Source: Ylistrum balloti (taxonomy: Eukaryota). From it: a DNA stretch of 64,000 nucleotides. The notes below the pieces were generated by a model, which ran no database searches, had not been told where the DNA came from, and was given only the letters and a program-made list of their open reading frames with translations. The position numbers were made by a program, and so were the translations under genes. Shown in pieces: positions 9,822-60,951 of the stretch (its first letter is position 1; each line of letters starts with the position of its first letter). Location: the NCBI RefSeq assembly GCF_031769215.1, contig NW_026782268.1, forward strand, positions 2,046,001-2,110,000. The letters are read 5' to 3'.

Positions 9822-9842
9822 GTGAAGTACATTCGTTTTTTA

Positions 9843-17800: not shown

Positions 17801-20800
17801 TGGGTCAGTCAAGGTCAATATGTGCACCTCCTAAAACTGTCATCTTAAACTAATAATTTTACCCAGGTCTATTTCCAACAGAAAATAAACAAATAACATT
17901 CAAAAACGTGATTTTCCTATATAAATTAACATAAATTTTACCCCCTACACAGGGGGAAATGTGAGACAATGGGGTCATGAAATTTACAATCTTGGTAAAG
18001 CATCTGAAGGCCTTTCTGTCCTTGAAGAGTACTTGATTCTATTATACCTGGGATTTGAGAAGAAGATTTTTGAAATTTCAACCAATTTGACCCTGTTTTT
18101 TTGCCCCATCCCTCAAGACCCTTGGGGTTGGGGACCATATAAATTGCAGTTTTGGTGTGCCTTTAGCCATGAAACATATTTTGTAAAATTTCATTGAGAT
18201 TGGTTCTGGAGTTTTCCAGAAAAAGTTGAAAATATTAAAAGTTCAAGACGCCGGACAAAAAGGAACCACAATAAAGGTCACCCAGAGACTTTGTCTCAGG
18301 TAACCTAAAAATACATGTACATATTGCACGCACTTACCAGCAAATTCACAGAAGTGATTTCCAATGTCATAAGGCTGGTAGTTGAACATTCCATATTCAT
18401 GGTCAATAAAAGTCACTTTGTCTGTATAAAAGAGATATTACCGTTTTGATATAGATTACTAGCTACAGTCAAATGGTATTCAGATATATCTTATGCTAAA
18501 ACTGAGAAAAGTCACGAAGCCTCAGTGATGCCAAAATGACAAGGTGGAAATGGTGCATTACATATAGAACCAACTACACATTCAAGGATAAGTAGCAATT
18601 AAGTTTTGAGAAAATAAAAACTTTCCTGCATGAGTAAGTGAATGTAAGCCTTGGTGCAGAAGACATTATTAACTGATAGCAGGTGTTGGAAAGCCAAGTT
18701 TGTTTTGTCTTCAGAATGAAAATTTCAGAACAATGAATGACATAAGCAGCTCATCATTACTTTTTTGAACAGAAATACTAAAGGCAATTTACAAGTACCT
18801 AAACATTAGGATGTAAAACAAAGTACCTGACTTTTTGTTGTAGATTACATTACCCACTAGAAGGTCATTGTGGGCATAAACAATGGGACACTCCATAGCC
18901 ATCAGGTGCTCCTTAAGGGTGACCATTTCACTCTTAAGTACTGATCGAGGCTGTACATGTTTGGAAAATCTGAAATGGAAGATATCCTTATGATGAATTT
19001 ACTCATATCCAAAAAGCTTCAAGGGAAACTCCAAAGTTGCACACTAATGCATGATCCTGATTGTACTAACATGAACTGCACATGATTGACCACTAATATG
19101 ACCTTAAATGACCGATGACTTGACCTTTCTGATCTATTGTGACCTTTCTGACTTGACCTTTCTGACCTATTGTAACCTTTCTGATCTATTGTTATATTTC
19201 TGACCTATTGTGACCTTTCTGCCCTATTGTGACCTGACCTATTGTGACCTTTCTGACCTATTGTAACCTTTCTGACCTATTGTGACCTTTCTGACCTATT
19301 GTTATCTTTCTGAACTATTGTTATCTTTCTGAACTATTGTGACCTGACCTAATGTGACCTTTCTGACCTATTGTGACCTTTCAACCAATAAAATCCTTTA
19401 TGGTAAGTCTCATGACTTAATATATGACCCTGTATGATCCTTAGGCCTGTATGACCTTGTGATATATGATCTTTTGATAAAGAATTTGATTGTGTCCCTA
19501 AATATAGCCTTGCTTTGTACAAGTGGTCAGTATTAAGTGGTTTGTGGGACATATGTCATACAGGTTTTTGTTGGTTGTTTCATTGATTGGTGAGGTAAGA
19601 TTTCAGTCGGTGTGGTCATTTTCAGACATTCCAACTTTACTAACCGAAAGTCGAACCTCACAAAGATAATATATATTTTTCATTTACCTGTACACCAGGT
19701 AGATATGTATCATGCACTGGTGTGTTCCTTCATATGTATTCGTTTGTATGTGTACGTGACTCATAACCACACTTAGGTTCAACATTTGTCACGTTTTGAT
19801 TGGGATTACTAAATCGGAGTAACACAGTACATGTATAGTTTATGTTATATCTCAGTCTCCTGTCATCAATAACATAATGGTTGACAGCCTGTGTTTACAC
19901 CAAATAACCTAACTCACTGATACTGACAACAATAAAGTCAAACATGCATGCAGGATAAACATTTCATCAACAGTGTACCTAAAATATGTTTCACTGGTAA
20001 GCTACTTAAATACCTTACAATCATGTAACACAAGGAGTATTAATTCATTTCTCAAAGAAATTTTTTTTCACAGTGAAAAATTTTTTTTTTCCAATATAAT
20101 ACTAACAATATGCCAAGTGAAAGAGATTGGGATCAAACTGTGTTACTCATACCACTGTAAGTGTATAGGGTGACAGCTTGCTGTTAGTCAATTGATATCA
20201 CATGAAAACTGTTCAGTAATGTATTTTCCTATTAAAAAGCACAACAGTGCTCTCAACCGTATAATTAAGGACTGCCCAAACACTCACTGCTATATCATAA
20301 TTTGGAGGATGAACGATACGTTTGTCCTTCTTCAACAGTACATCTCCTTACCAATGATTAAGATAAAATTTATTGTTTTTTGTAACTAATTAATCTACTC
20401 AACCATTTAACCTGCATATCATTAGACACTGAGTGTGATATAGTTGTGTGACTTGGTGTAAAATGCATCAACCACACACATATCATTTCTTTACAATACT
20501 GGCAGAAATATTGGTTTATAATCTTGTTTCCATTAAATGAAAAGAAAAAATGACATGTGATATCTCTTTAAAAAGTTTTTAAATCACCAAATTCTCGAAA
20601 CAGAAGCCATGATATTCATGCATGAAATGAATTTTCAACTTGGAGAGAAAATACAGAAATAAAATGCTTTGAATGAAGATTTGTTTTAAACAGCTGTAAT
20701 AGAGAAAAAATCACATGGCTAGGATCAGGTGAACTTATCAACTTGTATGGAAAGTTGACTCAGGGCTCCCGATCTGCCAGATTTGGGGCCGAATCCCAAT

Positions 20801-28623: not shown

Positions 28624-29658
28624 GTAGTATGTATATTCTTAACATGTACGTAAGTAAATATTGTTAATGTGATATGTATATTCTATACATGTATATAAGT
28701 AAATATTGATAACGTAGTATGTATATTCATATACATGTATATAAGTAAATATTGTTAATGTGATATGTATATTCTTTACATGTATATAAGTAAATATTGA
28801 TAATGTAGTATGTATATTCTTAACATGTACGTAAGTAAATATTGTTAATGTGATATGTATATTCTATACATGTATATAAGTAAATATTGATAATGTAGTA
28901 TGTATATTCTTAACATGTACGTAAGTAAATATTGTTAATGTGATATGTATATTCTATACATGTATATAAGTAAATATTGATAACGTAGTATGTATATTCA
29001 TATACATGTATATAAGTAAATATTGTTAATGTGATATGTATATTCTTTACATGTATATAAGTAAATATTGATAATGTAGTATGTATATTCTTAACATGTA
29101 CGTAAGTAAATATTGTTAATGTGATATGTATATTCTATACATGTATATAAGTAAATATTGATAATGTAGTATGTATATTCTTAACATGTACGTAAGTAAA
29201 TATTGATAATGTGATATGTATATTCTTTACATGTATATAAGTAAATATTGATAATGTAGTATATATATTCTTTACATGTACGTAAGTAAATATTGTTAAT
29301 GTGATATGTATATTCTTTACATGTATATAAGTAAATATTGATAATGTAATATGTATATTCTTAACATGTACGTAAGTAAATATTGATAATGTGATATGTA
29401 TATTCCTAACATGTATATAAGTAAATATTGATAATGTAGTATATATATTCTTTACATGTACGTAAGTAAATATTGTTAATGTGATATGTATATTCTTTAC
29501 ATGTATATAAGTAAATATTGATAATGTAGTATGTATATTCTTAACATGTACGTAAGTAAATATTGTTAATGTGATATGTATATTCTTTACATGTATATAA
29601 GTAAATATTGATAATGTAGTATATATATTCTTTACATGTACATAAGTAAATATTGATA
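28624..29658. repeat. 45-bp AT-rich minisatellite, ~23 copies, with higher-order structure
   Basis: Alternating gtagt- and gtgat-type monomers starting at 28624, 28669, 28714, 28760, 28805, 28850, 28895 and onward. Confidence 0.97.
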
Positions 29659-29819
29659 AAAGTTAAAAGAAGAAATATATTACCCAACACATTTGCCTCC
29701 TTTTATCGTATAATTCTCAAACCTACTTTCCTTTTGAAATTGTTTGACTAAAATATTTGCCTTTTCACCATTAGATTTGCACTCTGCATCTCTTCCAAAA
29801 ATAGGCATTTAACCTAGGG

Positions 29820-30720: not shown

Positions 30721-31670
30721 GACTTAATTTTGTTTAATAGCTTGCAGATAAATATGAAATTAATTGCATCATAACATTAAACATGTTGAAAATGAAATAA
30801 ATTTGATATCTCTGTACTTCGATCAAAACTTTGACCCAGTTTGTGACGTCATAACGTGCGTCATTCAGTGTTGTGACCGTGACCTAGGCTACAGTCGTTC
30901 GATCTCGAAACCAGTTTCCTGAAATAGAACTCTATACAGAGGTACTGCAGTTGATTGGATTAACTTTATCACCTTTCCTTCACACTTGTCGTCAGTTTTA
31001 ACGGGTGTGCCCACCGGAAACAATATGCTGTCGTCCCGTTTTACTACCAAACGTGTAGTAGTACTTCGGTGCGTAGTGATTTAAAAAAAAAAACAGCGGA
31101 AAATATGATAAGGCTGACCAATCAAATTAAGTTTAAATTATATGCAACTTGTTACATTCACTGGATAACATTCCAATTATGCGATAAACGTACATTTGTA
31201 TTTAAATACAGGTTTCATACAAATACTTTGCCTTCAAATAATGATATGAGTACATCACAATATTGTCTTTGAAAAGTCAGGCAACCAATATTTGCATTAG
31301 AATATTACTATAGAGCCATACAGCGGTTATTATATGGTCACTAAAACATATACATTGTTTGAATATTACATGTTTTCCTTTAGGATTAGTCATTTATGAT
31401 GAACATTTATTGATGTTTTTGATGTACCGATATGTTCTGTGTTAAAAGCACACGTTAGAAAGACCTGTTTATACTATTTCATTTTCATTGATTACATTTG
31501 CCTTCCCTAATTTCAAATAAGTCTGTATGTTACTGGTCATGGTCACAAGCCTTTTTTAATTGAAAGTTCACCAGTTCAAATTAATCAGATCAAGGATTCG
31601 GTATAACATATTCCTTCGTAATTAATGTTATTTGCCAAATTTTAATAATCTAGATTGTAGTCATTATTTG

Positions 31671-31715
31671 CCAAGGTTTTAGCCAATGAGGTCAAACAAA
31701 CGTGTGCATATATAA
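31671..31715 (+). promoter_or_regulatory. CCAAT-box element shared with receptor gene 5, followed by a TATA-like sequence
   Basis: GTTTTAGCCAATGAG at 31676-31690 is identical to 51767-51781; TATATAA at ~31709-31715. Confidence 0.6.
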
Positions 31716-31792
31716 TGTTGAAAAATGTTTTATTGATCTGTACTGACCTTTTAAGTCAGCTGTATCATGTTGACATTATATACACACAAAAC

Positions 31793-33079
31793 ATGGCCTC
31801 CTTGTTACTTCTACTCTCTATGTCATTGACAACCATTTGCGGAGCTACTCATGTAGATTTGAAAAAACTTCACCGAGATTTGATGGAAAATTATAACAAA
31901 AACTTACGTCCGACGTTTAACCTCTCACAGCCGACAGAAGTGGATATTCAGTTTTATCTGCTCTCGATAAAAGAATTCGACGAAAAGACCAGCAGATTTG
32001 CTATTGTTGGCGTATTTGTACTAAATTGGAACGACTTTCAGTTGGCATGGGATCCTGATGATTATGGTGGCATTGTAAGTACTGTTTTTCCACAGAACAC
32101 TTTATGGAAACCAGATCTTATACTTATGAATCCATATGAGAAAGTTGAATCTGCCGGCTTTGAGGATCTGAAAATTGTTGTGATTAATAATGGATCTGTT
32201 TTTTGGGCTCCGGTTGACGTTTATGAAGTCACGTGTCCAGCAGATGTAACGTACTATCCGTTTGATCAGCAAACGTGTTCGTTGTTTTTTAGTGTCTATA
32301 TGTATACAGTGTTTGATGTTACTTTGAAACCATCATCAACTCACATATTCACCGATGATTATTCGCCAAACAGTCTTTGGTACTTGAAAGACACAAGCTT
32401 TACAATCATTGAATCACATAACTCACAAACACTGTTGATGAAGACAATGCTTCAGAGAGGACCATTGTTTCAAGTCATAAACACTATAGTACCATTCAAT
32501 ATGTTGGGACTATTGAACATCATGGTGTTCCTTCTTCCTGCCGAATCTGGTGAACGTGTTGGTTTTTCCGTGACGATTCTGTTAGCTATTGCTGTGTTTA
32601 TGACAATTGTGGCGGACACTTTGCCTGGAACCAGCGAACCTTCTTTCCCTCGACTATGTTATTTATTGATAGCACAGTTAGGTGTCAATATGCTTGTGAC
32701 AGTTTTCACTATCTTAATATCAAGACTGCATCATAAACCAAAACAGCAAAATATTCCTTCATGGCTACAAAAAATCATAGGCAAATGTGTTTGTTTCCAT
32801 CCAAAATTCAAATTAATAAATTCAAATGAAAACATCAACAACCAAGATCTTAATAACCCGAACATCGATAGTTTAGAAACTGTTGTATCAATTGTTCAGG
32901 AAGCAAAGAATGTTGATTTAGGAGATGAGGTAAATCACAGACCTCGAAAAGGAGTAAAACACACGTGTAGTAAAATGTCATGGCAGACAGTGGTGAGCTT
33001 TCTCGATGTCTTTTCTTTTCTTTTCTTTCTTGTCATTTATGTATCAAGCATGATAGCCACTTACTTTGTGTTCTGTTAA
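31793..33079 (+). CDS. Intronless divergent nicotinic-type Cys-loop channel subunit, gene 1 (non-alpha)
   Basis: Signal peptide starts MASLLLLLSM (ATG 31793 in aaacATGG; the ORF-track start at 31715 is an upstream extension). WKPD, Cys-loop CPADVTYYPFDQQTC (C-x13-C), M1-M3, M2 GERVGFSVTILLAIAVFMTIVAD, C-terminal M4; no vicinal CC. Confidence 0.93.
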   Translation: MASLLLLLSMSLTTICGATHVDLKKLHRDLMENYNKNLRPTFNLSQPTEVDIQFYLLSIKEFDEKTSRFAIVGVFVLNWNDFQLAWDPDDYGGIVSTVFPQNTLWKPDLILMNPYEKVESAGFEDLKIVVINNGSVFWAPVDVYEVTCPADVTYYPFDQQTCSLFFSVYMYTVFDVTLKPSSTHIFTDDYSPNSLWYLKDTSFTIIESHNSQTLLMKTMLQRGPLFQVINTIVPFNMLGLLNIMVFLLPAESGERVGFSVTILLAIAVFMTIVADTLPGTSEPSFPRLCYLLIAQLGVNMLVTVFTILISRLHHKPKQQNIPSWLQKIIGKCVCFHPKFKLINSNENINNQDLNNPNIDSLETVVSIVQEAKNVDLGDEVNHRPRKGVKHTCSKMSWQTVVSFLDVFSFLFFLVIYVSSMIATYFVFC

Positions 33080-33299
33080 ATTACACTGCACATGTGTATA
33101 TCTTTTCGAAAACATATTTTTGTTTCATCAATTGACATGAGGCTAAATGATGCCAAATGGATGGTAATTGTGAAGTGAATCAATTTCAAAATTTGATGTT
33201 GATCATTCCTAAATTTTTTGACACCAAAATGTTCATTGATGAATTTCGTGTTAAGTGTAAGTTGATATTTTAAGATATGTCATTCAGTTTACCCGAACA

Positions 33300-33960
33300 A
33301 ATCACGAACCTTTGCTAAACAGAGAATTTCACAAAAATTTAGACTTCGGTCAACGCAGGGACGTTGCTACCCAGGAAATGGAAAATCGCATTAAGGATAT
33401 TGAAATCATAACGCTTATCATACAGCCATACTAAAAGCTGCCGTGTTGGTATTGGTATAGGAAAAGATCGAGATAAGCAGCTGATGTAGAAGATAAAAAA
33501 TCTGGTGGATATAAATGTACATGTATAGGATGGACGTGCTCAATAAATGCTAATTTTTTTTAACTATTTAAAGACAAGATGTCTTCGATATATCTGAAAG
33601 TGAAATCAAAGGACCTTTCAAGGTCTTAATGGCCTGTTTTGATAGGCTCTTCGATATATTCAGCGTCGTATGAAAAAAAAAAAAAACCAAGGGTACAGTT
33701 AGTTCCTATATGTATGCCGATAGTCTGTAGAGAGATCTTGTCACTAAAATATTTATAATTCTCAAATTGATTGTGATAACGTTTGTGAGAAATAATATCT
33801 GTGTTAATTTTGAAATTTTAAAAACAAAATGCAGGTTTAATTTATTTACAACTGCAATGCCTCGTATACTTTATATTACTTTCAGTCCGAAATATAAGAA
33901 AATCATCTTTAAAAAAATTGGCATTAAAACAGAGTGGAGGCATGTAAGTTTGTGATACAT
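33300..33960 (-). mobile_element. Decayed Penelope-like RT fragment
   Basis: Minus strand reads QTIGIHIGTNC (QxxGIPMGTNC-like), SFDFTFRYIEDILSL (YxDD region), SSTSAAYLDL and DKRYDF. Confidence 0.7.
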
Positions 33961-34754
33961 GTATGTCAGTTTAATTCATTGGTATTGGATTTGTTACGAA
34001 AATTAAAAAAAAAAAAAAAAAAAAAACTACAACTTTCCGTACGAACGGGTTAGGATAGTTTTTATTCTTTTATGATAAATGTATTACATGTATTTTATAA
34101 ACCACCTCAAAAGTGGATGGATGTAGAAAAAGATGCTATACAACAGGGGAATAGAACAGAACAATACATACGTAATGGAGGGCGATTCTGATTTCAGTAG
34201 TTTGTCTGGATATGCCATTATGACAATAAAATAAATTTTTCAAGACTGTTTTGTCTATAATGACAAACAGCAAGCCATCCCAACCAATCTATTCATATAA
34301 TGGATGGACTGTACAAATAAAACTCTTGGGATTTAAAAAAATTCTTGATGAAAAAGGTTACCTTGTGAAATCAATATGGTGTTTAGAACAGTTCACCGTC
34401 ACTTAATATCACCTGCTTTGATGTTAAAGCCACAACAGGTTGATATTTTATTGAATAGTTGTAGTTTACAACCCAGGATAACCATTCAAATAAGAAATGA
34501 TTGACTCACTCACTCACCTACCCACTCAATCATCGGACCTTTATTCCGTTTCCTATGGGGATATCAGTTTATCAGTTTTAATGAGCGGTTATTGTTTCCT
34601 CCAAATCGATATTTTGCAATAAATCTTTATCCTATTTTTAACGTCATTTGAGCTTTAAGTGTATTGTTCCAGTTAATGCACTCAGTATTATTGCGTGGAA
34701 ATTCATTGATCAATCTTATTCTATCTAAGCCAGTTGATAGTAACACACGAAAAA

Positions 34755-36062
34755 ATGACGTTCTTTCTATTTCTTCTCTCAGCGTATTTGACAACCATTT
34801 ACGGAGCAACTCATGTAGATCTGAAAAGACTTAACCAAAACTTGATGTCAAATTACAGCAAACATTTGCGCCCGACATTTAACCTCTCTCAACCAACAGA
34901 ATTAGATGTCATTTTTCATGTTTCTTCAATAAAGGAATTTGAAGAAAAGACCAGCAGATTTTCTATGTTTGGAGTATTTATGATTTATTGGCATGACTTT
35001 CAGTTAGAATGGAATCCGGACGATTACGGTGGCATTGTAAGTACAGTTTTCCCACAGAGCTCTTTGTGGAAACCAGACCTATTACTTTTAAACCCATATG
35101 AGAAAGTTGAACCTGCTGGCTTCGACGATCTCAAGATCATTGTAAATTACAACGGATCTGTGTACTGGTCTCCAGCTAATGTTTATGAGGTCACGTGTCC
35201 AGCAGATGTAACATATTATCCGTTTGATCAGCAAACATGTCCGTTGTATTTTGGTGTCTACATGTATACCATTTTTGATGTGACTTTGAAACCATTATCT
35301 TCTGGTATAACAACTATTTATTATTTCCCAAACAGTGTCTGGCACTTGGTAAATGTAAGCTCTAGTATTCATCCATCACTTGACACGGAAATACTCATCC
35401 TGACAATAGTACTTCAACGACGATCAATGTTTCAAGTCATAAACACTATAGTACCATTCAGTATGTTGGGACTGTTGAACATCATGGTGTTCCTTCTTCC
35501 TGCCGAATCTGGTGAACGTGTTGGTTTTTCCGTGACGATTCTGTTAGCTATTGCTGTGTTTATGACAATTGTGGCGGACACTTTGCCTGGAACCAGCGAA
35601 CCTTCTTTCCCTCGACTATGTTATTTATTGATAGCCGAACTCTTTATCAATACGTTGGTTACGATTTCTACCATTTTGTTACTAAGACTACATCACAAAC
35701 CCAAGCAACAGACCATTCCAACTTGGTTGCAATATCTCATATGTTTTTGTTTTAAAACTAAAAACAAGACCCAACCTATAGAGGAAGACATCCAAGGTAT
35801 TAGCAATGAAGATAACTTCATAATTAAAACCATTGTACCCAAGGTTCAGGAAACAAAGACAGATAAAGGAGTAAGGAAGGATTCTGATTTGAACGGAGAT
35901 GACACAATTAACGGGAAATGCCCTATCTGTAGAGGAAAAAAATATGTTTGTAATGAGTCGTCATGGCAGACTTTGGCGAGCTTTCTCGATATCTTTTTCT
36001 TTCTGTTGTTTCTTGTCTTCTTTGTTTCATGTAAGGTTGTAGCTTATTTTGTATATATTTAA
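34755..36062 (+). CDS. Intronless divergent nicotinic-type Cys-loop channel subunit, gene 2
   Basis: First ATG at 34755 (MTFFLFLLSAYLTTIYG signal peptide); Cys-loop CPADVTYYPFDQQTC; four TM segments; M2 identical to gene 1. Confidence 0.93.
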   Translation: MTFFLFLLSAYLTTIYGATHVDLKRLNQNLMSNYSKHLRPTFNLSQPTELDVIFHVSSIKEFEEKTSRFSMFGVFMIYWHDFQLEWNPDDYGGIVSTVFPQSSLWKPDLLLLNPYEKVEPAGFDDLKIIVNYNGSVYWSPANVYEVTCPADVTYYPFDQQTCPLYFGVYMYTIFDVTLKPLSSGITTIYYFPNSVWHLVNVSSSIHPSLDTEILILTIVLQRRSMFQVINTIVPFSMLGLLNIMVFLLPAESGERVGFSVTILLAIAVFMTIVADTLPGTSEPSFPRLCYLLIAELFINTLVTISTILLLRLHHKPKQQTIPTWLQYLICFCFKTKNKTQPIEEDIQGISNEDNFIIKTIVPKVQETKTDKGVRKDSDLNGDDTINGKCPICRGKKYVCNESSWQTLASFLDIFFFLLFLVFFVSCKVVAYFVYI

Positions 36063-36319
36063 GATATTCTAGGCGTATTAATATTTTGTATGGAAAAGAT
36101 TGTTTTATCCTATGTAGACGTCAGGTTATTCATACTGACTATGAAGATCAATAGTATTCTCGCTTTTCACACTAGATACTAAGCACCTCAATATGTTTTA
36201 TATTATTTGAGTATAAATCATTTGACACTGGTAAAACAGATGTTACGAATATGAAGTCTGTCATAGAAAACTGTGGGGAACAATTGAAATGAATGGAAAA
36301 ATATTCCAGAAAAAATGAT

Positions 36320-36321
<2 letters not shown>

Positions 36322-36364
<43 letters not shown>
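36322..36364. repeat. (AC)n microsatellite, ~21 units
   Basis: Directly visible. Confidence 0.98.
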
Positions 36365-36367
<3 letters not shown>

Positions 36368-38149
36368 GTCAAATTATAAGAACCGGATGAACCGGTAAGG
36401 AGCAAAACATTTCTTTTTTTTGGAAATACATGAAGCAAAACAAAGAGTACACTGTTATGTGCCTATATTTAAAAAGAATACTACAAAAAAAGCGAATATT
36501 TTGGGATATATGTTGATTATTAATTGTTGTGCTAAATACCGATATGAAGGACAACATCAATATTATAATGATCATTAAAACTGCCTCGTTTAGCTATGAC
36601 TCGTAATAGTTCGGTCAAATGATACCTCTTCTATCATCTATCAGTATTCCGATTGACTTCATCAATATATAGTAACGAGGTATTGATTCAAATCATATAC
36701 ATTTTTCAAATGGCGCTTGACTACTATGATTGCCAATATCGCAGTCGTGTGGCGTACTTTATGCTTCATCTTTTTGGCTGTATTAGAATTATGATATTGT
36801 TTATGTTGTTTGTACATCCTGGTTGACATTGTTGTTACCATGTCTGTCATGTTATTCGTCATTTAATAAAATTACATTACTGGCTGTATGTTTTTCTTGG
36901 TTGTTATTGATAAATAACATACCCAAAACAGCTGAAGTCGTGACTCAATTATCGCGAGGGAAATTATAACATAAATACCTTTTATGTAACAATGATATCA
37001 CATTTTACATTTGCAGACAATGTACATTAGTAGAAAACTTTTTAATTTGCTTTGCAATACACATGTTGCCGATAATAATATAAATGATTGATGATACCAA
37101 TGAAATAAATTACTCGAAACATTAACGTCTACTGATCGTATCAATACTTATGATATCTAAACACATCGAACAGTGCCAGTAATTTCAACACAATGAAAAT
37201 ATGTCAATAAGGTGTAGAATATCACATTAACACAAACGCAATTGGTTTTGTTTCGATATTTGAAAGTTCACGTGGCAATTATTTAGATATTAGATCCAAA
37301 TGGAAGGCAAACATTATGAGTACATTTATTACAAGCCAGACTTCTCTATTAGATAGACTATTAAACAATCTAAACTATTACCTAGTGTTTGGATTCTCCT
37401 TTTGTGTCCCAAAATTACAAATACTTAGAAAAGTTTGACGTAATGTTTACATACACGAATAATGATAAATAGGACACAACACAAATAATACCTTAAGGTA
37501 TAATTCTAATTGTATATGACACTATTACGTGTGCCATTGTTGACCAGAAAAAGAACTTGACGCGTAGATCGAATTAAAAAAGAGATATTGTTGAAATACT
37601 ATATTGTTTCCTTGTCTTGGAAAAAAGACACATATAAACAAATCTAAGAAATTATCGATTTTGCTTGTAACAAACATTTACTCATTTTTCGATTTTTCAA
37701 AAATATTTTGTTTTCATATTGTGAACGTTAATACTGATATTGTTTCACTTAATGTCGCTTAAAATTGAAAATTATTGATCGACGATTTATCTGTTTTTAT
37801 TTTCTAAGGAGATTATAAAATATGTACATTGTGTATAGCAATGCTGCAGAATAATATTGTGTATGTAGATAAATGACGTGTGTTTGGTAGCAGGACGCCA
37901 AACATCCAGTCTTTGTTATAGTAATGTATTGAAAAGAAGGTTCCATGATAAGTGACCTTATTCATTTTTCAATAGGAAAAAATCCTTTGTTCTTTAAGAT
38001 TTACCATTGACGATGGTATGATGACGGCAGTTACATGAAGTTACAGCATGGCACTTTCACAAAATTAAGTCAGGATGCAGGATTACAATTGCTTTTTTCC
38101 GGGTGGAAAAACTAACTAAACATTATGTGTGACGCATTTTTTTCCTGAA

Positions 38150-38480
38150 GCTAGAGATGGAAAAATGCGTGGTAAACCTGATATTCAAGACACGCTTTCG
38201 ATTGCTTATCAAACAGCTATATTGGAAAGTTGTCCATGTTTGTTTCGTTGTATTTAGAAGCGTCTGTCATGTTCTTGATTACCAATTCTGGTGGATATAT
38301 ACAATGAACATTGTCAATAATTCGCCTGTTATTTAGAGACAAGACGTCATTAGTCCATCTGAAAGTGAAATTAAACGACTTTGCAAGGTCATTTTGTGAC
38401 CTTTCCGAATATGCTCTTTTATAAATTCAGACATGTATGAAAACAAAATAGGACAGCCAACAGAGGGACCTTGTTAGCAT
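38150..38480 (-). mobile_element. Decayed Penelope-like RT fragment
   Basis: atctgaaagtgaaattaaacgactttgcaag is the reverse complement of the sequence encoding AKSFNFTFR at ~53900; VPLLAVLF corresponds to the APLLADLF motif. Confidence 0.65.
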
Positions 38481-39160
38481 CGCTGTAGAAAAAATTGCAC
38501 AAAGATTTGTTTGAACAGTTTGAGTTGGCAATCTACATGATTGTAATAATTTATAAGTATAAGTATTTCATGCTTTTGATTTTTCTCTGTCATGCTAGAC
38601 AGTTTGTTACAGTAAAGTTGTTATTAAGCGTTTCCACTATAAATATACATGGCAATGAGTGATAGAGCCACACATGACGTATTATGTAATAATGATATAT
38701 TTTAGCTGGTGAGATTTTTATGTCATTTTATAATTATTATTTAATGAAGTGACAATTGTAAAATAAATTTAAGGTAAAATGCACTTAATATACAATACAA
38801 ATGCTACCAGCAATGACCAAATTAATTATTTACACGATTGTAATTAAGTAAAGAAAACAAAGGCAAACAAATGCTGCTACATATGGGAATTATCGTTAGG
38901 CAGATACGAGTTTCGCATCGATCAGAGCAGGTGACTTCAATACAAGTTAATGTGACGTACATCACATTCACAGCAATGGTTTCTGCCGGGTGTTTATGTT
39001 TTTGATAATTTAGTGTTAGAGATAAATGACAGGCAAACACTGTGTGGATCTGACAAACTGATTCTCTAAGAAAAGCATTTTTCAGTAAACGCAAGTTATT
39101 CTACTACAGGAACGCGATAAATATGTCTGGAAATCAGGAGGTATCAATGTAATAAGGAAA

Positions 39161-40462
39161 ATGGCATCCGTGTTATTTCTTCTCTGTATGTCATTGACAA
39201 CCATTTACGGAGCCACTCATGTAGATCTGAAAAGACTTCACCAAAACTTGATGTCAAATTACAGCAAACATTTGCGCCCGACATTTAACCTCTCTCAACC
39301 AACAGAATTAAATGTCATTTTTCATGTTACTTCAATAAAGGAATTTGAAGAAAAGACCAGCAGATTTTCTATGTTTGGAGTATTTATGATTTATTGGCAT
39401 GACTTTCAGTTGGAATGGAATCCGGACGATTACGGTGGCATTGTAAGTACAGTTTTCCCACAGAGCTCTTTGTGGAAACCAGACCTATTACTTTTAAACC
39501 CATATGAGAAAGTTGAACCTGCTGGCTTCGACGATCTCAAGATCATTGTAAATTACAACGGATCTGTGTACTGGTCTCCAGCTAATGTTTATGAGGTCAC
39601 GTGTCCAGCAGATGTTACATATTATCCGTTTGATCAGCAAACTTGTGCGTTGTATTTTGGTGTCTACATGTATACCATTTTTGATGTGACGTTGAAACCA
39701 TTATCCTCTGGTATAACAACTATTTATTATTTCCCAAACAGTGTCTGGCACTTGGTAAATGTAAGCTCTAGTATTCATCCATCACTTGACACGGAAATAC
39801 TCATCCTGACAATAGTACTTCAACGACGATCAATGTTTCAAGTCATAAACACTATAGTACCATTCAGTATGTTGGGACTGTTGAACATCATGGTGTTCCT
39901 TCTTCCTGCCGAATCTGGTGAACGTGTTGGTTTTTCCGTGACGATTCTGTTAGCTATTGCTGTGTTTATGACAATTGTGGCGGACACTTTGCCTGGAACC
40001 AGCGAACCTTCTTTCCCTCGACTATGTTATTTATTGATAGCCGAACTCTTCATCAATATGTTGGTTACGATTTCTACCATTTTGTTACTAAGACTACATC
40101 ACAAACCCAAGCAACAGACCATTCCATCTTGGTTACAATATCTAATGAGTAATTGTGTTTGTTTTAAAACCAAAACCGAAATAGAAAATGTAGAGGAAAA
40201 TCCAAAATACACCAATGATGTTACCAATGTAAACAACATTGTTATTGAAACAGAGGAAATAGACATCAGATTGGAGAACGATTATGATTTAAAGGGAGAC
40301 GACACAAAAACCGGATACTGCCTTGCTTGTAGAAAAAGGAAATATGTTTGTAATGAGCCGTCATGGCAGACTTTGGCGAGCTTTCTCGATGGCTTTTTCT
40401 TTCTGTTTTTTCTTGTTTTATTCGTTGCATGTAATATTGCAGCTTATTTTGTTTACGTTTAG
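39161..40462 (+). CDS. Intronless divergent nicotinic-type Cys-loop channel subunit, gene 3
   Basis: 433-aa ORF with signal peptide, Cys-loop and four TM segments; 933 nt are colinear with gene 2 at offset 4406. Confidence 0.94.
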   Translation: MASVLFLLCMSLTTIYGATHVDLKRLHQNLMSNYSKHLRPTFNLSQPTELNVIFHVTSIKEFEEKTSRFSMFGVFMIYWHDFQLEWNPDDYGGIVSTVFPQSSLWKPDLLLLNPYEKVEPAGFDDLKIIVNYNGSVYWSPANVYEVTCPADVTYYPFDQQTCALYFGVYMYTIFDVTLKPLSSGITTIYYFPNSVWHLVNVSSSIHPSLDTEILILTIVLQRRSMFQVINTIVPFSMLGLLNIMVFLLPAESGERVGFSVTILLAIAVFMTIVADTLPGTSEPSFPRLCYLLIAELFINMLVTISTILLLRLHHKPKQQTIPSWLQYLMSNCVCFKTKTEIENVEENPKYTNDVTNVNNIVIETEEIDIRLENDYDLKGDDTKTGYCLACRKRKYVCNEPSWQTLASFLDGFFFLFFLVLFVACNIAAYFVYV

Positions 40463-43400
40463 AATATTTTTTGTGTATAAATTGTTAAGCTTGTGTGATA
40501 TATAGACGTCAGGGTAAGAATTCACACAAATACCACCAGTGTTAAATTATAGCTCAATTTGCTCATTTGAATATTACTTATTTGACACTGATGAGATCGA
40601 AATGTTTTGACATGGAGATTGGATCGAAAATAATAGGGCATTTGATTTTTCTACAGAATGAATTCGATTTAATAATTAGGCGAATTGATCATCGTACAAT
40701 TATCTACAACTTATCACATTCTGTAGTAGAGCTGGAAATACTACTTCCTGATCTTTCTTGGTTAAGATAAGGAACACATGCGTTTGCATTTCACATCTGT
40801 GATATTTTTTAAAGTTGTTATTTGTAAATAATTGTAGAACTCTACATCACGCGATCCACTTGTGATTCATCATACGATGCTATGCAATGTGCGTAATTTC
40901 TCCACGTAGAGCCAATCAATACAAAAGCAAATAGCATCTGAAAATCTAATCAGTGAAGAATATTTGAAGTATATATCTATTAATGGAATCTGTGTATATT
41001 TTGAAGAATTAACGTTTAGAATAAAATGACAACATTTTCTTGATGTAAAAAGTCTTCGTTTGATACGATTCATCTGTAATCATTTATTGATTAAATCAAC
41101 CCGGATGTGACATAAGAATAAATTCAATACCACCAAAGCATTTAGCCACCGTCTTTCAATGATACTCTACTTAATAAGACACAAAATCGAAAAAAAAAAT
41201 CTAAAAATTTATTATTTATCATTAGTTTAAGATGAAAAAACAAGAAAATCTAACCTCAAATTCTATAAAACAAGGGCAAAATATTTGAACGAAATAAAGA
41301 ATAACGTGGAGTCTCCAATAAAAGTACAATGATAATAAGACCAAGTGTTCCAAAACAGTATGCGTCTTCTTCGAAAACATGACATACATCAACGGAATCA
41401 ATTATCAAAATAACGAACATCAAACACGTTTAGTTTTATATCCCACAAAGAAATAGAATATTTCTTAACGAGACCACTATGACGACTATACAACTTCCCC
41501 ATAATTTTTTGATGAATTTGAAATCTTGTGTTACTAATTTGTCTTTCTACTATATTATGCAAGTATTAAGAAAATAGGCGGAGGATAGGGGTAAGTCAGA
41601 TGAGAGTACACGCGTTCCCGTGAGTCTGGTTTATTGCGGGTAAACGGTTTATCTAGGTATTCAAGAGAGACCGGTTCATAGCAAGTATACGATTTATCTA
41701 TGCGTCTATGCGGTCCCGTGAGTCCGGTATATTGCGGGTATACGGTTTATCTGAAAATCTGTTTGGCTATAAACTGATGGCTTGGCTTCTTTTATTGATT
41801 TATTGAGCGGATAATCTTGTCCCAATGTTCCCGTCACAGCCCACTCATAGTTAATCTTTTTTTTTTCTCTTCTGAGTTTTAGAGGTAGTTCGTCGACTAA
41901 CTGACAGATACAAAGTGGTCAATTTGACAGTGGGTCACGATATACAGGTAATCACGTGAATTCATGACTGCATTGAGTTTTTAAATTTATTTCTCTTTTT
42001 GTTCAACATCCGGAATTCTTTCTTAGATTTATTACATTTACAAGTACTGTCTACATCTCAACAAGACAGTATGAAACCTGTTCAGTTTGTCAGTAGTTCA
42101 AGAACAACGGAAATAATCACACGATAGAAAAATGTAATCCTTGAAAATCCTTTTGACAGGCTTTCGCTTTTCTGATAATTGAATTTCTACTTTTGTCTGC
42201 TTTATGAAACAACACATGGTTTTGTGGTTGATACTTGTTGATGGAAACCATTGTAAAGTATATTTACACATATTTTGCACTAAGATCTGTTACATAACAA
42301 ACCATGGATTGTGATACATTAAAAACTCCAAAACAGTTCTCAAAGTGAATGTAGTAAATGCCCCCTTGGAAGGCTGTAATTTCGATTCAAAGGTCCTACA
42401 TTTAAACTGTCAACGGCAATTCGCTGGACGTGGACTATAGATGCCAACTGAGGTATATTTCATATATAATAGGTAGAAAGGATACTCCAAAGTAATAGAT
42501 TAATACAATATCTCACTCCATTTGACTATTAGGTGAGGTTGTTTATCTTATCTTGAGAGAAAGGCTGCTTTAGTCAGCGAACACCACGAGGTTTGATGAT
42601 TGTTTAAAATTTTATCATCTCCCCTTCTCCCTTCCACTTCGTCATCTTACCCCCTCCCTCCCCCTCCATCCCCCATTCAACCACACATCCCCCACCACAC
42701 ACAAGTTTGTTAAACATTGACTAGTTTCTGAGCGTCAGAATTTATAATTATTATCTGAATTCAAAATATGGCAATAAAAATGATACAATAAAATTGAGGT
42801 TATGATACAGTTAAGATAAACATTTGGAAGTCAAAGATAAACCATCCAGATAATAACAGAACATAATCTCATTTCACCATGCCCAAATAAGGTATCTTTA
42901 CAGAACATTTCAAACGATACATACTTATAATGTATGCTATTTTTTAAATCAATATTTGCTTTATTCAAAGTAACCATAGCATACAAATATATTGCAAATA
43001 AAACATTTGATGTATTTGTTTTGCAGTAAGCACTCGATCTAAAATGACATAAATAAAGAAACCTTTGTATTTTATTGCACTAACAGATCTTATTTTTTGT
43101 TTCGTAGATACGAGACCCACATTGATCAATGTCAGTGACCTCGTTACGAATCAATGATATCACCTATGTGTAATACATCCATTAGTAGTATTTGTTCCTT
43201 TGATTTGTGACCGTTTTGAATAACAAACATGTATAATGCTAAAGCTATTTCGAAGGTAAATAATGGATGTATTACCAACTAGAATTCTTTTTCGTTATAG
43301 ACAATCGACTAAAGTAATCAATGAAATGTCTTTTCATAGTTAATAGCGTGTATGAGTAAACATCAATTATTCTCCTAAAGGTGTCTGATGGCACTAAACT

Positions 43401-45320: not shown

Positions 45321-46670
45321 TCAAATAGAATCAGATATCGAGTTGTTAGCTTGAGAAAATACAAAATAGGCGACTATCTTGAGTGAACCAAAACAGATGA
45401 AGAACATCACAAATAAAAAGACATCGAGGAATTTTGCAAAACTCCGCCATGATGTTTTATCACAAAACTGTTTTCTTTTTGTTTCAGTCATCTGGTTATC
45501 TTGTACCGTAATATTGTTCCATTTATGGTCGTTTTCACTTTTTGTAATACTCCTCTCTGCATCATGATTCTTTGACGTAATGTTATCAATAGAAATGATG
45601 GCTTGATTGTTCAAATCTTTCTTCATGTTTATTTCCGTGGCATTTTCAATTTTCCGATTGCGATGGGAGCAAATACATTTGCATATGGCATAATTCAGCC
45701 ATAGAGGAACTGTCTGGTGATCGGGTTTATAATGCAATCTTAGGACTAAGATGGTAGAAATTGTCACAAGAGCATTGACGCAGAGTTCAGTTGTCAGTAT
45801 ATAAAACAGTCGAGGAAAAGAAGGCTCGCTTGTTACTGGTAGAGTGTCTGCTACAATTGTCATAAACACAGCTACAGCTAGCAAGACAGTGACAGAAAAT
45901 CCAACTCGTTCACCAGATTCAAATGGCAAAAGAAAAACCATGATGTTTAAAAGTCCAAGAATGCTAAAAGGTACTATGGTATTTATTATTTGAAACATCG
46001 GTCGACGTTGTAAAAACATTGTTACCACAAATGTTTGGCTTTCCAATTCAGTAACAACAGACATATTAGCATTTGTTACGTCCCAAAGGCTGTTTGGATA
46101 ATAATAGTCTAAAATCATGTTCGTTGGCATTGATTCAAGGAATACATCAGATACAGTCATCATGAACGCAGAGAAATATAAGGAACACATTTGTCGATCA
46201 AATGGATAAAACTTAACATCAGCTGGACATGTGACCTCAAATACATCGGGGGGTACCCAAAGCATAGTCCCATAATAATTCACTGTGATTCTTAGGCTGT
46301 CGTATCCTGGAGGCTCAATTTTATCGTATGGGTTTAATAATATCATGTCAGGTGTCCAAAGAAGACTCTGGCGGATAAATATTTGTTCAATACCACCAAA
46401 TTCATCTGGATTCCACTTCATTCGGAAATCAATCCAGGAAAATATAAACATTCCAACAATGGCAAACTTACTTGTCTTTTCGTCGAATTCTTTCAAAGAC
46501 AAAATCTGAAAGCCGACATACACTCTTGTTGGCTGTGAGAGATCTGACGTGGGACGTAACTCCTTATTATAGTTTGACGTCAACGTTTGGTAAAGTCTGG
46601 TCAAGTTTTCATGTGTTGTCCCATATGTCGTTGTAGTGGAAACGGCGAGAAGCAAAAGTAGCCACATCAT
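45321..46670 (-). CDS. Intronless divergent nicotinic-type Cys-loop channel subunit, gene 4 (inverted)
   Basis: 449 aa; signal peptide MMWLLLLLAVS, WTPD, Cys-loop CPADVKFYPFDRQMC, M2 GERVGFSVTVLLAVAVFMTIVAD. Confidence 0.94.
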   Translation of the reverse strand: MMWLLLLLAVSTTTTYGTTHENLTRLYQTLTSNYNKELRPTSDLSQPTRVYVGFQILSLKEFDEKTSKFAIVGMFIFSWIDFRMKWNPDEFGGIEQIFIRQSLLWTPDMILLNPYDKIEPPGYDSLRITVNYYGTMLWVPPDVFEVTCPADVKFYPFDRQMCSLYFSAFMMTVSDVFLESMPTNMILDYYYPNSLWDVTNANMSVVTELESQTFVVTMFLQRRPMFQIINTIVPFSILGLLNIMVFLLPFESGERVGFSVTVLLAVAVFMTIVADTLPVTSEPSFPRLFYILTTELCVNALVTISTILVLRLHYKPDHQTVPLWLNYAICKCICSHRNRKIENATEINMKKDLNNQAIISIDNITSKNHDAERSITKSENDHKWNNITVQDNQMTETKRKQFCDKTSWRSFAKFLDVFLFVMFFICFGSLKIVAYFVFSQANNSISDSI

Positions 46671-51882: not shown

Positions 51883-53217
51883 ATGACATCCGAAACAAAA
51901 ATGTTGTGGTTACTAGTGCTTGCGTATATTTCTGTGTCAAACGCAGCTACACATGAGGATTACAGATTGCTTCACCAAACATTGATGACAAACTATACCA
52001 AAGTACTGCGTCCGACGTTTAACTCGTCCATTCCAACGACAGTGGACATTGGATTTTATCTTCTCTCGTTAAAGGAATTTGAAGAGAAGTCAAGCAAATT
52101 TTCTGTTGTTGGAGCGTTTTCAATGACCTGGCATGATTTTCAATTGGTATGGAATCCTGATAATTATGGTGGAATTGAATATACATTTTTTCCGCAGAGC
52201 TCTTTGTGGAAACCTGACATCCTTCTTGTGAATCCTTATGAGAAACTTCAATCTCCCGGTTTTGACGATCTAAAGATCTTAGTTCGGAAAGATGGAATCG
52301 TGAATTGGTCTCCACCTGACATTTATGATGTCACATGTCCATCAGATGTAACATATTATCCTTTTGATCAGCAAATATGTTCATTGCATTTCGCAGTATA
52401 TATGCATACCACATATGAAGTCTTTTTAGAGCCAAGGTCTCCTTACATTAATTTAGACTATTATTCACCCAACAGTCTTTGGGATGTGAAAAACGCCAAT
52501 TTGATTGTTGATCCTGTCTTCACAACACAAACGCTGATACTGGAAACCGTACTGCAGAGAAGACCAATGTTTCAAGTTATAAATACGATAGTACCGTTCA
52601 GTATTTTAGGATTGTTGAATATAATGGTGTTCCTTCTTCCTGCCGAGTCTGGGGAACGTGTTGGCTTTTCCGTGACTGTTCTTTTGGCTGTTGCCGTGTT
52701 TATGACCATTGTGGCCGACACTTTGCCGGGAACCAGCGAACCTTCTTTCCCTCGGTTGTGTTATCTATTGACAGCAGAGCTCTGTGTCAATACCTTTGTG
52801 ACAATTTGTACCATTTTGGTCTCGAGACTGCATCATAAACCAAAGCACCATACCATTCCATCATGGCTGCAAAACATGATATGTAAAGGTGGCTGTTTTA
52901 AAACTAAAACAGACCTAAGTAGTATCGATAAAAAACACACTGAACAGGATCTGAACAATGGAGACATCGTTTGTTTGGGTGACTCTTCGACAAAAACTCG
53001 GAAAGCTGAGAAAACTGACACAGGATATGAAAAGGATTATGAATGGAACAGTGATAGTATTGTCAATGGAAACAGTGTCACTCAAAAATGTTTTAAAAGC
53101 AACACGTCATGGCATACTGTGGCAAATTTTCTCGATATTTTCTTCTTTGTTACATTTCTAGTAATTTCCGCATGTAACAAAATAGTGGCTTATTTTGTAT
53201 TTACTTCAAATAAATAA
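51883..53217 (+). CDS. Intronless divergent nicotinic-type Cys-loop channel subunit, gene 5
   Basis: 444 aa (alternative start 51901); signal peptide, Cys-loop CPSDVTYYPFDQQIC, four TM segments; AATAAA at 53267-53272. Confidence 0.94.
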   Translation: MTSETKMLWLLVLAYISVSNAATHEDYRLLHQTLMTNYTKVLRPTFNSSIPTTVDIGFYLLSLKEFEEKSSKFSVVGAFSMTWHDFQLVWNPDNYGGIEYTFFPQSSLWKPDILLVNPYEKLQSPGFDDLKILVRKDGIVNWSPPDIYDVTCPSDVTYYPFDQQICSLHFAVYMHTTYEVFLEPRSPYINLDYYSPNSLWDVKNANLIVDPVFTTQTLILETVLQRRPMFQVINTIVPFSILGLLNIMVFLLPAESGERVGFSVTVLLAVAVFMTIVADTLPGTSEPSFPRLCYLLTAELCVNTFVTICTILVSRLHHKPKHHTIPSWLQNMICKGGCFKTKTDLSSIDKKHTEQDLNNGDIVCLGDSSTKTRKAEKTDTGYEKDYEWNSDSIVNGNSVTQKCFKSNTSWHTVANFLDIFFFVTFLVISACNKIVAYFVFTSNK

Positions 53218-54722: not shown

Positions 54723-54989
54723 AGTTTTATTCTGCTTGTTTATATTTTAATAGTTCTCTTCTTCTTACCAAATCAGGTGGATATACTAACGTTTAATATC
54801 TGCTCTCTTTCCACTCATTAGTTGTATGAAGAAATCGATCTGATATGGGTTATTCAGATGAAAATGTTCTTATGGGATTTTAAATAATGGCTACAAAATA
54901 AGTAATACTGATCAGTAACGGTACGACCTAGTGATTCGTCGGACGTATTATAGTAGTAAATTTATAACTAAATGAGAATCGACACAAAA

Positions 54990-59604: not shown

Positions 59605-60951
59605 ATGAAGGAAGCTACATGTATATCGACTCTCACGTTGATGTTCCTTTTGACGGGTTCTGGCGATGCAGCAACGCACACAGATATGGTCAAACTCCAT
59701 GAGAACTTGACGAAACATTACAACAAGTATGTCAGGCCAACTTTTAATCAGTCAGAGCCAACAATTGTTAATGTCAATTTCAACCTTCTTTCTATCAAAG
59801 AACTGGATGAAAAGACCAATAAATTGGCTATAGTAGGAATTTTTACATACTCATGGAATGACTTTCAACTCCAGTGGAATTACACGGATTTTGGCAACAG
59901 TATTACAACATTTCTGCCTCAGACGGCAGTGTGGAAACCCGACGTTATACAAGTTAACCCATATGATGAAATTGAACCTCTCGGTTATGACAGACAAACA
60001 ATTCGGGTCGTATACAACGGAGATATGTACTGGGCCCCAGCAAATGTCTACCAGTCTAGTTGTGCTATTGATGTGACGTTTTATCCCTTTGATGTCCAAT
60101 CTTGTTTCATAATGTTTAGCTCTTTGATGTACGATATATCGGAGTTACGTTTCGAAAGCAATAATACTATGCTAGACCTTTCATACTTCTACTCAAATGG
60201 CTTGTGGGAGGTCAAGGCAACAGGAATACATTGTGACAAGTCATCACCGCTTATTATTTTAATATTGCAACTAAAAAGGCGATCAATATTCCATGTTCTT
60301 AACACGTTGATACCTATCAGTGTCATAGGACTTTTGAATGTCTTGGTATTCTTGCTCCCTGCAGAGTCAGGAGAGCGTGTCAGCTTCTCGATTACTGTAT
60401 TATTAGCAATGGCTGTGTTTATCAGTATTGTGACGGACAGTCTACCCAGTAACAGTGAGCCGAATGTCCCGTTTCTGTGTTACCTTCTTGCAATCGATCT
60501 AGGCGCGAATGCTTTAGTAACCGTTTGCGCCATTCTTGGATTGCGTCTCCATCACAAACCAGACTCTCAGAAGGTCCCCAAATGGCTGAAGAGACTAATG
60601 TCCTGCCGTCCAAGCATTAAAAAGAAGAGCAGGTGTACCGATACACGCTTAGAATCTGACAATAGCATGGAGAGTTGGAATAATTCTTCTCCAGAACAGA
60701 TTAAACACATTTACTTTAATGAATCTGCAATTTCCCGGCCAAGTGAAAAAACATTCAAATACGAGCAACAAGATGTCAATGACACTGATCAAAAGACTGT
60801 GTTATCTACTCAGGAACCCTCTAAAAACATTACATGGAAAAATGTCGCAGTGGTCTTGGACATTGTTTTCTTCGTGTTATTTTTAATGGTTTTACTTGCT
60901 AAAGATGTTGTGGCAGTAATTATATTTTTGCAATCACAAAACTATTCTTAA
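59605..60951 (+). CDS. Intronless divergent nicotinic-type Cys-loop channel subunit, gene 6 (most divergent)
   Basis: First ATG 59605 (the track start 59575 is GTG); signal peptide ends GDA|ATH; WKPD; Cys-loop CAIDVTFYPFDVQSC; M2 GERVSFSITVLLAMAVFISIVTD; M4 present. Confidence 0.93.
   Translation: MKEATCISTLTLMFLLTGSGDAATHTDMVKLHENLTKHYNKYVRPTFNQSEPTIVNVNFNLLSIKELDEKTNKLAIVGIFTYSWNDFQLQWNYTDFGNSITTFLPQTAVWKPDVIQVNPYDEIEPLGYDRQTIRVVYNGDMYWAPANVYQSSCAIDVTFYPFDVQSCFIMFSSLMYDISELRFESNNTMLDLSYFYSNGLWEVKATGIHCDKSSPLIILILQLKRRSIFHVLNTLIPISVIGLLNVLVFLLPAESGERVSFSITVLLAMAVFISIVTDSLPSNSEPNVPFLCYLLAIDLGANALVTVCAILGLRLHHKPDSQKVPKWLKRLMSCRPSIKKKSRCTDTRLESDNSMESWNNSSPEQIKHIYFNESAISRPSEKTFKYEQQDVNDTDQKTVLSTQEPSKNITWKNVAVVLDIVFFVLFLMVLLAKDVVAVIIFLQSQNYS

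What the first reader, a model, noticed from the sequence alone, without database searches (positions are those of the whole stretch)
32466..32673. Pore-specific gene conversion: M1-M2-M3 tract nearly identical at DNA level in genes 1, 2 and 3
32466-32673, 35428-35635 and 39834-40041 match at 206 of 208 nt (gene 1 versus genes 2/3), including a perfect 161-nt run. The flanking ECD of gene 1 differs from genes 2/3 at many synonymous and non-synonymous sites, with about four silent changes in ~57 nt of the Cys-loop alone. Internal control: gene 5 encodes almost the same peptide here but has many silent differences, so protein constraint alone does not explain the identity. Inference: ectopic conversion homogenises the channel module while the sensor module diverges.
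Basis: partly seen in the sequence, partly recalled or inferred. Interest (0 to 1): 0.75.

Follow-up and report, generated by a model that had tools for sequence, protein, structure and literature searches.

The report
Pore-segment gene conversion in scallop receptors
Three neighbouring acetylcholine-receptor-like channel genes of the saucer scallop share an almost identical 208-base pore-coding stretch, because that stretch was recently copied from one gene into another (gene conversion), a well-known process seen here in a gene family where it seems not to have been described.

Summary
Tract 32466-32673 (gene 1) matches 35428-35635 and 39834-40041 (genes 2 and 3) at 206/208, with a 161-nt perfect run and sharp edges. 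Silent divergence between gene 1 and gene 2 is 0.04 in the tract, against 0.79 upstream and 1.6 downstream. Gene 5 encodes nearly the same peptide with 23 silent differences.

Contigs built from reads of four other individuals (two studies) contain both gene-1/tract junctions and a 208-nt contig at about three times single-copy depth. It is therefore not an assembly or polishing artefact.

The best reading is recent interlocus gene conversion among tandem, intronless nAChR-like genes of Ylistrum balloti.

Two qualifications apply:
- Genes 2 and 3 are identical here because of a separate, larger 933-nt tract (34788-35720) that also covers the whole mature ligand-binding domain. Conversion is therefore not intrinsically pore-specific.
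- The 208-nt tract coincides with the only block of the family that is at least 80% identical at the DNA level. Its placement is probably limited by homology rather than selected.

The orthologous Pecten maximus cluster shows older concerted evolution limited to the same segment (AU tests).

This scan has noted similar pore-limited tracts on other pieces of this genome. Overall this is a new member of a known kind, of moderate interest.

The parts
32466..32673 (+). Conversion tract in gene 1 (M1, M2, M2-M3 loop, start of M3). 206/208 to genes 2/3, with differences at 32499 and 32512.
35428..35635 (+). The same tract in gene 2. It equals a 208-nt read-derived contig at about 3x single-copy depth.
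39834..40041 (+). The same tract in gene 3, 208/208 to gene 2.
34788..35720 (+). Larger g2/g3 conversion tract, gene-2 side: 933 nt with 12 differences. It covers the mature ECD plus M1 to the start of M3. The gene-1 tract is nested inside it.
39194..40126 (+). Larger g2/g3 conversion tract, gene-3 side.
31793..33079 (+). Gene 1: intronless Cys-loop receptor subunit, 428 aa from the likely ATG (the ORF opens at 31715).
34755..36062 (+). Gene 2: intronless Cys-loop receptor subunit, 435 aa.
39161..40462 (+). Gene 3: intronless Cys-loop receptor subunit, 433 aa.
52568..52775 (+). Homologous segment of gene 5 (CDS 51883-53217). It is the unconverted control: 182/208 nt and nearly the same peptide.
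45790..45997 (-). Homologous segment of gene 4 (CDS 45321-46670, minus strand). Unconverted, 162/208.
60287..60494 (+). Homologous segment of gene 6 (CDS 59605-60951). Unconverted, 134/208.

Best explanation
This is recent interlocus (non-allelic) gene conversion among adjacent, same-strand, intronless nAChR-like genes of Ylistrum balloti. During repair of a break, or during recombination, one paralogue was used as template for another. A short patch of at most 208 nt was copied between gene 1 and gene 2 or gene 3. A separate, longer patch of 933 nt was copied between genes 2 and 3. The direction and order of the two events are unresolved. Both tracts are about 1% diverged, which is in the range of allelic variation, so they are young or still ongoing. 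The short tract sits on M1-M2-M3 because that is the only stretch where these roughly 76%-identical genes were similar enough (about 85-90%) for strand invasion and heteroduplex extension. In the flanks, about 40% mismatch would stop extension. This mechanistic step is inferred from general knowledge of homology dependence in recombination. Because the peptide there is already almost invariant, such patches are nearly neutral and are not purged. Once homogenised, the segment remains a good substrate, so concerted evolution can persist there while the rest of the gene diverges. My odds are about 0.93 that conversion is the cause, and about 0.65 that homology limitation, rather than selection for a shared pore, is the main reason for its placement.
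For: Shown:
- 206/208 identity with edges sharp to the base.
- dS 0.04 in the tract, against 0.79 upstream and 1.6 downstream.
- Third-position run tests are significant only for g1-g2/g3 and g2-g3, out of 15 pairs.
- Fisher tests give p=3e-10 and p=1e-6.
- Gene 5 and the cross-species orthologues keep the peptide but differ at 32-60% of silent sites.
- In four read sets from two studies, all differing from the reference by SNPs, the g1 flank contigs end exactly 30 nt (k-1) inside the tract, at 32495 and 32644, at depth ~15. A contig equal to the 208-nt tract has depth ~45, and the g2/g3-shared contig 34788-35457 has depth ~29.
- The g2/g3 933-nt tract has unalignable flanks.
- The tract coincides with the only block of at least 0.8 cross-species nt identity.
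- In A. irradians the silent-site runs fall mostly in the second most conserved block, the Cys-loop.
- In P. maximus the ECD and post-tract alignments reject paralogue monophyly (AU p=1.5e-6 and 5.5e-4), while the tract rejects the orthology topology (p=0.017).
- No RNA-structure signal (z=-0.52), no Rfam hit, and no rise in GC3.
Against: - Donor, recipient and the order of the two events cannot be inferred, because g1 and g2/3 are sister lineages in every partition.
- The read evidence consists of k=31 contigs. These break at the repeat, so no single molecule was seen spanning a whole gene.
- The homology-limited reading is correlational. Selection for a common pore would place tracts on the same conserved block and is not excluded.
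- The P. maximus tract test rests on 207 nt, with p=0.017.
- No expression data were available for these genes.
Confidence: 0.85

Rival explanations
1. Selection-maintained modular homogenisation. Conversion events occur more widely, but only those confined to the pore survive. Subunits that co-assemble would need a common pore while their ligand-binding domains specialise.
For: Tract-limited concerted evolution recurs in P. maximus. Earlier notes of this scan describe similar pore tracts in other clusters of the same genome (not tested here). Tract edges lie close to the ECD/M1 border.
Against: Genes 2 and 3 share a converted ECD as well. The pore peptide is kept nearly invariant across three genera without DNA identity, so ordinary purifying selection already does that job. 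The tract ends inside M3, not at a domain border. The tract equals the high-identity block. ECD dN/dS is about 0.25, so there is no sign of diversifying selection. Co-assembly of these subunits is unknown.
Confidence: 0.2
2. Assembly or polishing artefact: reads from genes 2/3 overwrote a truly diverged segment of gene 1 in the reference.
For: Short-read polishing can homogenise paralogous segments. The window is from a single assembly.
Against: Contigs built only from reads of four other individuals contain both junctions of the g1 flank with the tract. The tract contig has three-copy depth. No alternative g1 continuation appears among the records and loose ends that the tool listed; many more were not shown.
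Confidence: 0.02
3. Nucleotide-level constraint: an embedded RNA or DNA element, or codon constraint, keeps the DNA identical without any copying.
For: Silent divergence in the tract is somewhat lower than in the ECD for most pairs, even between species (tract/ECD pS ratio about 0.65-1.0).
Against: Gene 5 has 23 silent differences, and cross-species orthologues show pS 0.32-0.60 for the same peptide. Folding energy is ordinary and there is no Rfam match. The edges are sharp rather than graded.
Confidence: 0.03
4. Chimeric genes formed by unequal crossing-over, or a very recent duplication whose flanks then diverged unusually fast.
For: Tandem arrays undergo unequal crossing-over. Genes 2 and 3 look like young duplicates over 933 nt.
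Against: Both tracts are bounded by diverged sequence on both sides, whereas a single crossover leaves one-sided similarity. Flank divergence is as high at silent sites (dS 0.8-1.6 for g1, 0.39 for g2-g3 downstream). The intergenic flanks of g2 and g3 are unalignable.
Confidence: 0.03

Closest known systems
Interlocus (non-allelic) gene conversion with mosaic divergence in tandem paralogues, e.g. the three Arabidopsis halleri HMA4 copies (bioRxiv 10.1101/2025.10.29.685298)
   Same: Tandem paralogues. Short tracts with near-zero divergence are embedded in diverged sequence. The effective conversion rate varies along the gene, giving a mosaic (abstract; here).
   Different: A different gene family and kingdom. 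Here the genes are intronless, and the persistent tract is a ~200-nt transmembrane-coding block between genes only ~76% identical elsewhere.
Domain-limited concerted evolution in receptor families, e.g. paired CEACAM receptors (PMC2832619, PMC2110893)
   Same: One part of a receptor is kept alike between paralogues while other parts diverge. I did not read these papers: their titles and abstract openings came up in the search, and the comparison rests on my own knowledge of that literature.
   Different: By my own knowledge, in CEACAMs the ligand-binding domain is the homogenised part and signalling parts differ. Here it is the channel part, and a neutral homology-limited cause suffices.
Retroposition-plus-tandem-duplication expansion of intronless nAChR genes in bivalves (Jiao et al. 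2019, PMC6896357)
   Same: Intronless nAChR-like genes in tandem arrays in a bivalve.
   Different: That paper does not mention gene conversion or concerted evolution (0 occurrences). It reads species-wise clustering of paralogues as post-speciation expansion. Conversion of the most conserved block could add to that signal.

Membership tests
Interlocus gene conversion tract | A segment between paralogues with divergence significantly below that of the rest of the gene, including at silent sites | tested here: met
   dS 0.04 against 0.79 and 1.6. Permutation of third positions reached the observed run in 0 of 5000 shuffles. Fisher p=3e-10.
Interlocus gene conversion tract | Bounded by diverged sequence on both sides (distinguishes it from a single unequal crossover or a young duplication) | tested here: met
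   Differences at 32465 and 32674. Flanking 60 nt are 58% and 62% identical. The g2/g3 tract is likewise bounded.
Interlocus gene conversion tract | Identity not explained by protein or nucleotide constraint (control lineages keep the peptide but not the DNA) | tested here: met
   Gene 5 has 23 silent differences. Cross-species pS is 0.32-0.60. No RNA signal.
Interlocus gene conversion tract | Phylogenetic conflict between the tract and its flanks | tested here: inconclusive
   In Y. balloti the topology is the same in all partitions and only the branch length collapses. In the orthologous P. maximus cluster the conflict is significant (AU tests).
Interlocus gene conversion tract | Present in independent sequence data (not an assembly product) | tested here: met
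   Four read-derived contig sets from two studies contain both junctions, and the tract is at 3x depth. No spanning long reads were available.
Interlocus gene conversion tract | Identifiable donor and recipient | tested here: inconclusive
   g1 and g2/3 are sisters in every partition. Shared derived states fit either direction.
Cys-loop pentameric ligand-gated channel, nAChR-like subunit | Neur_chan_LBD plus Neur_chan_memb domains | tested here: met
   All six genes, E 1e-41 to 1e-43 and 1e-13 to 1e-20. The best solved relatives are alpha-7 nAChR chains, E 2e-46.
Cys-loop pentameric ligand-gated channel, nAChR-like subunit | Cys-loop C-x13-C and the hydrophobic segments M1-M3 and M4 | tested here: met
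   CPADVTYYPFDQQTC in g1-g4, and variants with the same C-x13-C spacing in g5 and g6. M1-M3 align to alpha-7. There is a hydrophobic C-terminal segment.
Cys-loop pentameric ligand-gated channel, nAChR-like subunit | Alpha-type vicinal Cys pair in loop C | tested here: not met
   There is no CC in the loop-C region of any of the six proteins. They are non-alpha-type subunits and their ligand is unknown.
Bivalve intronless tandem nAChR expansion (Jiao 2019) | Single-exon genes in a tandem array in a bivalve | tested here: met
   Six uninterrupted ORFs within 30 kb.

The most novel reading that the evidence does not exclude
The M1-M3 segment behaves as a family-wide conversion cassette. Recurrent conversion across many nAChR-like clusters and several scallop genera would be retained by selection so that co-assembling subunits keep one pore while their sensors diverge. 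As a side effect, it would inflate the apparent lineage-specific expansions reported for molluscan nAChRs.
Probability: 0.15. Interest if true: 0.6.

Novelty: new member of a known kind. Interest (0 to 1): 0.42.

Why it matters
Bivalves hold by far the largest nAChR-like repertoires known. Their history has been read from whole-protein trees as retroposition followed by recent, species-specific tandem duplication (PMC6896357).

If the most conserved block of these genes, which carries much of the alignable signal, is repeatedly overwritten between neighbours, three things follow:
- Paralogues will look younger and more species-specific than they are.
- Trees and dating for this family should then be built on separate partitions.
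- Pore residues cannot be treated as independent observations across paralogues.

The locus is also a clean natural example of how conversion can persist in one ~200-nt block long after the rest of two genes has diverged beyond the reach of recombination. It does not reveal a new mechanism.

Tried and rejected
- GC-biased conversion: GC3 of the tract in genes 1-3 (0.38-0.41) is not higher than in unconverted gene 5 (0.43).
- Embedded RNA element: folding z-score is -0.52 and there is no Rfam family in 31000-41000.
- Extra copies of the tract: a 26-nt core with up to 3 mismatches occurs only in genes 1, 2, 3 and 5 in the window. The three-copy depth of the tract contig argues against further identical copies in the genome.
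- Seventh copy: 47800-48548 is a decayed gene-5-like fragment with stops, frameshifts and an internal deletion. That deletion removes most of the tract, and the fragment is not converted.
- Donor direction from shared derived sites: uninformative.
- RNA evidence: no RNA run holds the stretch.
- Literature: no paper in the searched library links gene conversion with Cys-loop receptor paralogues. The two co-occurrence hits look incidental: I checked one, where the phrase stands only in the reference list, and judged the other from its title and counts.
- Ongoing g2/g3 conversion: the four read sets carry gene-3 letters at several reference gene-2 sites in a contig of about 2x depth. This hints at polymorphisms shared between genes 2 and 3, but contig depth ratios (1.3-2.1x) are too noisy to claim it.

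Full report
**What is in the window**

The window carries six uninterrupted ORFs of 428-449 codons:
- g1 31793-33079 (+)
- g2 34755-36062 (+)
- g3 39161-40462 (+)
- g4 45321-46670 (-)
- g5 51883-53217 (+)
- g6 59605-60951 (+)

. All six have Neur_chan_LBD and Neur_chan_memb domains. Their best solved relatives are alpha-7 nicotinic receptor chains (E 2e-46). They have a C-x13-C Cys-loop and a GER-type M2 start, but no vicinal Cys pair in loop C, so they are non-alpha-type subunits.

This fits the intronless, tandemly arrayed nAChR expansion of bivalves described by Jiao et al. 2019 (PMC6896357).

- The three 208-nt stretches align without gaps. g2 equals g3, and g1 differs at two positions: 32499 (Asn/Ser) and 32512 (silent).
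- The perfect run is 161 nt.
- The bases just outside the tract (32465 and 32674) differ. The neighbouring 60 nt are only 58% and 62% identical.
- Nei-Gojobori dS between g1 and g2 is 0.79 in the extracellular domain, 0.04 in the tract and 1.6 downstream.
- Gene 5 differs from genes 1-3 by only 4-6 residues over these 70 codons, yet has 23 silent differences (dS 0.66).
- Fisher tests on silent differences give p=3e-10 (g1-g2, tract versus ECD) and p=1e-6 (tract, g1-g2 versus g1-g5).
- A GENECONV-style permutation of third positions singles out only g1-g2/g3 and g2-g3 among the 15 pairs.

**Not an artefact**

I laid Logan contigs (k=31) of four runs from two studies on 31500-36200. All four differ from the reference by SNPs.
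- In every run a contig of single-copy depth (about 11-16) runs from the g1 upstream flank to 32495. Another starts at 32644. These points are exactly k-1 = 30 nt inside the tract from each edge, which is the behaviour expected where a unique path enters a repeat.
- In the three runs whose tract contig is listed (X1, X2, X4), a contig equal to the 208-nt tract has depth of about 40-45, roughly three copies.
- The stretch 34788-35457 forms one contig of about two-copy depth.

So both junctions of g1 with the tract exist in reads of other individuals, and the tract is present about three times per genome. A limitation is that such contigs break at the repeat, so no single molecule spanning a gene was seen.

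**A second, larger tract**

Aligning the g2 and g3 loci with their flanks shows 933 nt (34788-35720 = 39194-40126) with only 12 differences. The surroundings are quite different:
- Upstream, the signal-peptide region has 11 differences in 28 nt.
- Downstream lies a cytoplasmic loop diverged by substitutions and indels.
- The M4 region is 81-90% identical.
- The intergenic DNA is unalignable.

Silent divergence is 0.077 in the ECD and 0.39 downstream. Genes 2 and 3 are therefore themselves mosaics, and their tract includes the whole mature ligand-binding domain. The g1 tract is nested inside it.

**Why the short tract sits on the pore**

The mean nucleotide identity between unconverted family members of different species is 0.79-0.85 only across codon columns 230-310. 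That block is the same as the tract (columns 235-303). Identity falls to 0.48 just upstream and about 0.66-0.69 downstream. The second most conserved block is the Cys-loop, at 0.77.

Recombination needs homology. This is established knowledge and was not tested here. So a patch between genes that are about 76% identical elsewhere can only form and extend in this block. Genes 2 and 3, being closer to each other, could exchange a much longer patch.

The tract ends about 7 residues into M3 rather than at a domain border. There is no GC3 rise, no unusual RNA folding and no Rfam match.

**Relatives**

I fetched the orthologous clusters of Pecten maximus (L001, L003) and Argopecten irradians (L002, L004, L005). 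The tract peptide is nearly invariant across the three genera, but silent-site differences between species are 32-60%.

Within P. maximus:
- Tract pS is 0.15-0.36, against 0.45-0.73 in the ECD.
- Three paralogue pairs have significant runs of identical third positions inside the tract (p 0.001-0.006). Eight cross-species pairs have none.
- AU tests show that the ECD and post-tract alignments reject monophyly of the P. maximus paralogues (p=1.5e-6 and 5.5e-4). The tract alignment rejects the orthology topology (p=0.017).

In A. irradians the runs lie mostly in the Cys-loop block.

Older conversion limited to the conserved blocks thus recurs in other scallops. This is what a homology-limited process predicts, but a selective filter is not excluded.

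**Interpretation and limits**

I conclude that there were two recent interlocus conversion events, or an ongoing exchange, among three adjacent same-strand genes. The donor, the recipient and the order of events are unresolved, because g1 and g2/3 are sisters in all partitions.

The adaptive reading, a shared pore for co-assembling subunits, remains possible. It is unnecessary, because purifying selection alone keeps the peptide constant across genera. ECD dN/dS of about 0.25 shows constraint, not diversification. No expression data were found.

**Context**

Mosaic interlocus conversion in tandem paralogues is well known (for example). I found no paper in the searched library describing it for Cys-loop receptors.

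Earlier notes of this scan report similar pore-limited tracts in other nAChR-like clusters of this genome. I did not test those loci, and they are not counted as evidence here.

My verdict is a real, clean, moderately interesting new instance of a known process. It has a practical consequence for how molluscan nAChR phylogenies are read.

Noticed in passing
window 47800-48548 and 54972-55106: A decayed gene-5-like receptor pseudogene. Its N-terminal piece and its M3-to-C-terminal piece are joined, so residues ~95-286 are missing, and it has several stops and frameshifts. A further ~45-codon N-terminal fragment lies downstream of gene 5.
   Followed up: partly
window 33384-33540: A short stretch between genes 1 and 2 has contig depth of about 1800-2800 in all four read sets, with many loose ends at 33458-33494. 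It is probably a fragment of a highly repeated dispersed element.
   Followed up: no
window 9728-11400 and 28643-29749: Two long minisatellite arrays, one with a 29-nt unit (over 50 copies) and one with a 45-nt unit (about 18 or more copies). A smaller 19-nt array lies at 19137-19394.
   Followed up: no
window 34788-35457: In four other individuals this g2/g3-shared stretch forms one contig of roughly two-copy depth. That contig carries gene-3 letters at reference gene-2 sites 34923, 35285 and 35300, and at 34833 in two of the runs. This hints at polymorphisms shared between genes 2 and 3, i.e. ongoing conversion. Contig depths are too noisy to be sure.
   Followed up: partly
window 33932-34219: In all four read sets a contig of single-copy depth skips 286 nt of the g1-g2 intergenic region, alongside read-through contigs. 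It may be an indel polymorphism or a repeat.
   Followed up: no
window 31980-32465 and homologous parts of genes 2-6: All six subunits lack the loop-C vicinal cysteines. Loop C and the region just before M1 are the most variable coding parts, with cross-species nt identity of 0.48-0.55.
   Followed up: partly
L003 20612-21296 (Pecten maximus): A choline-kinase gene lies next to the orthologous receptor cluster in P. maximus. Synteny with the Y. balloti window was not checked.
   Followed up: no
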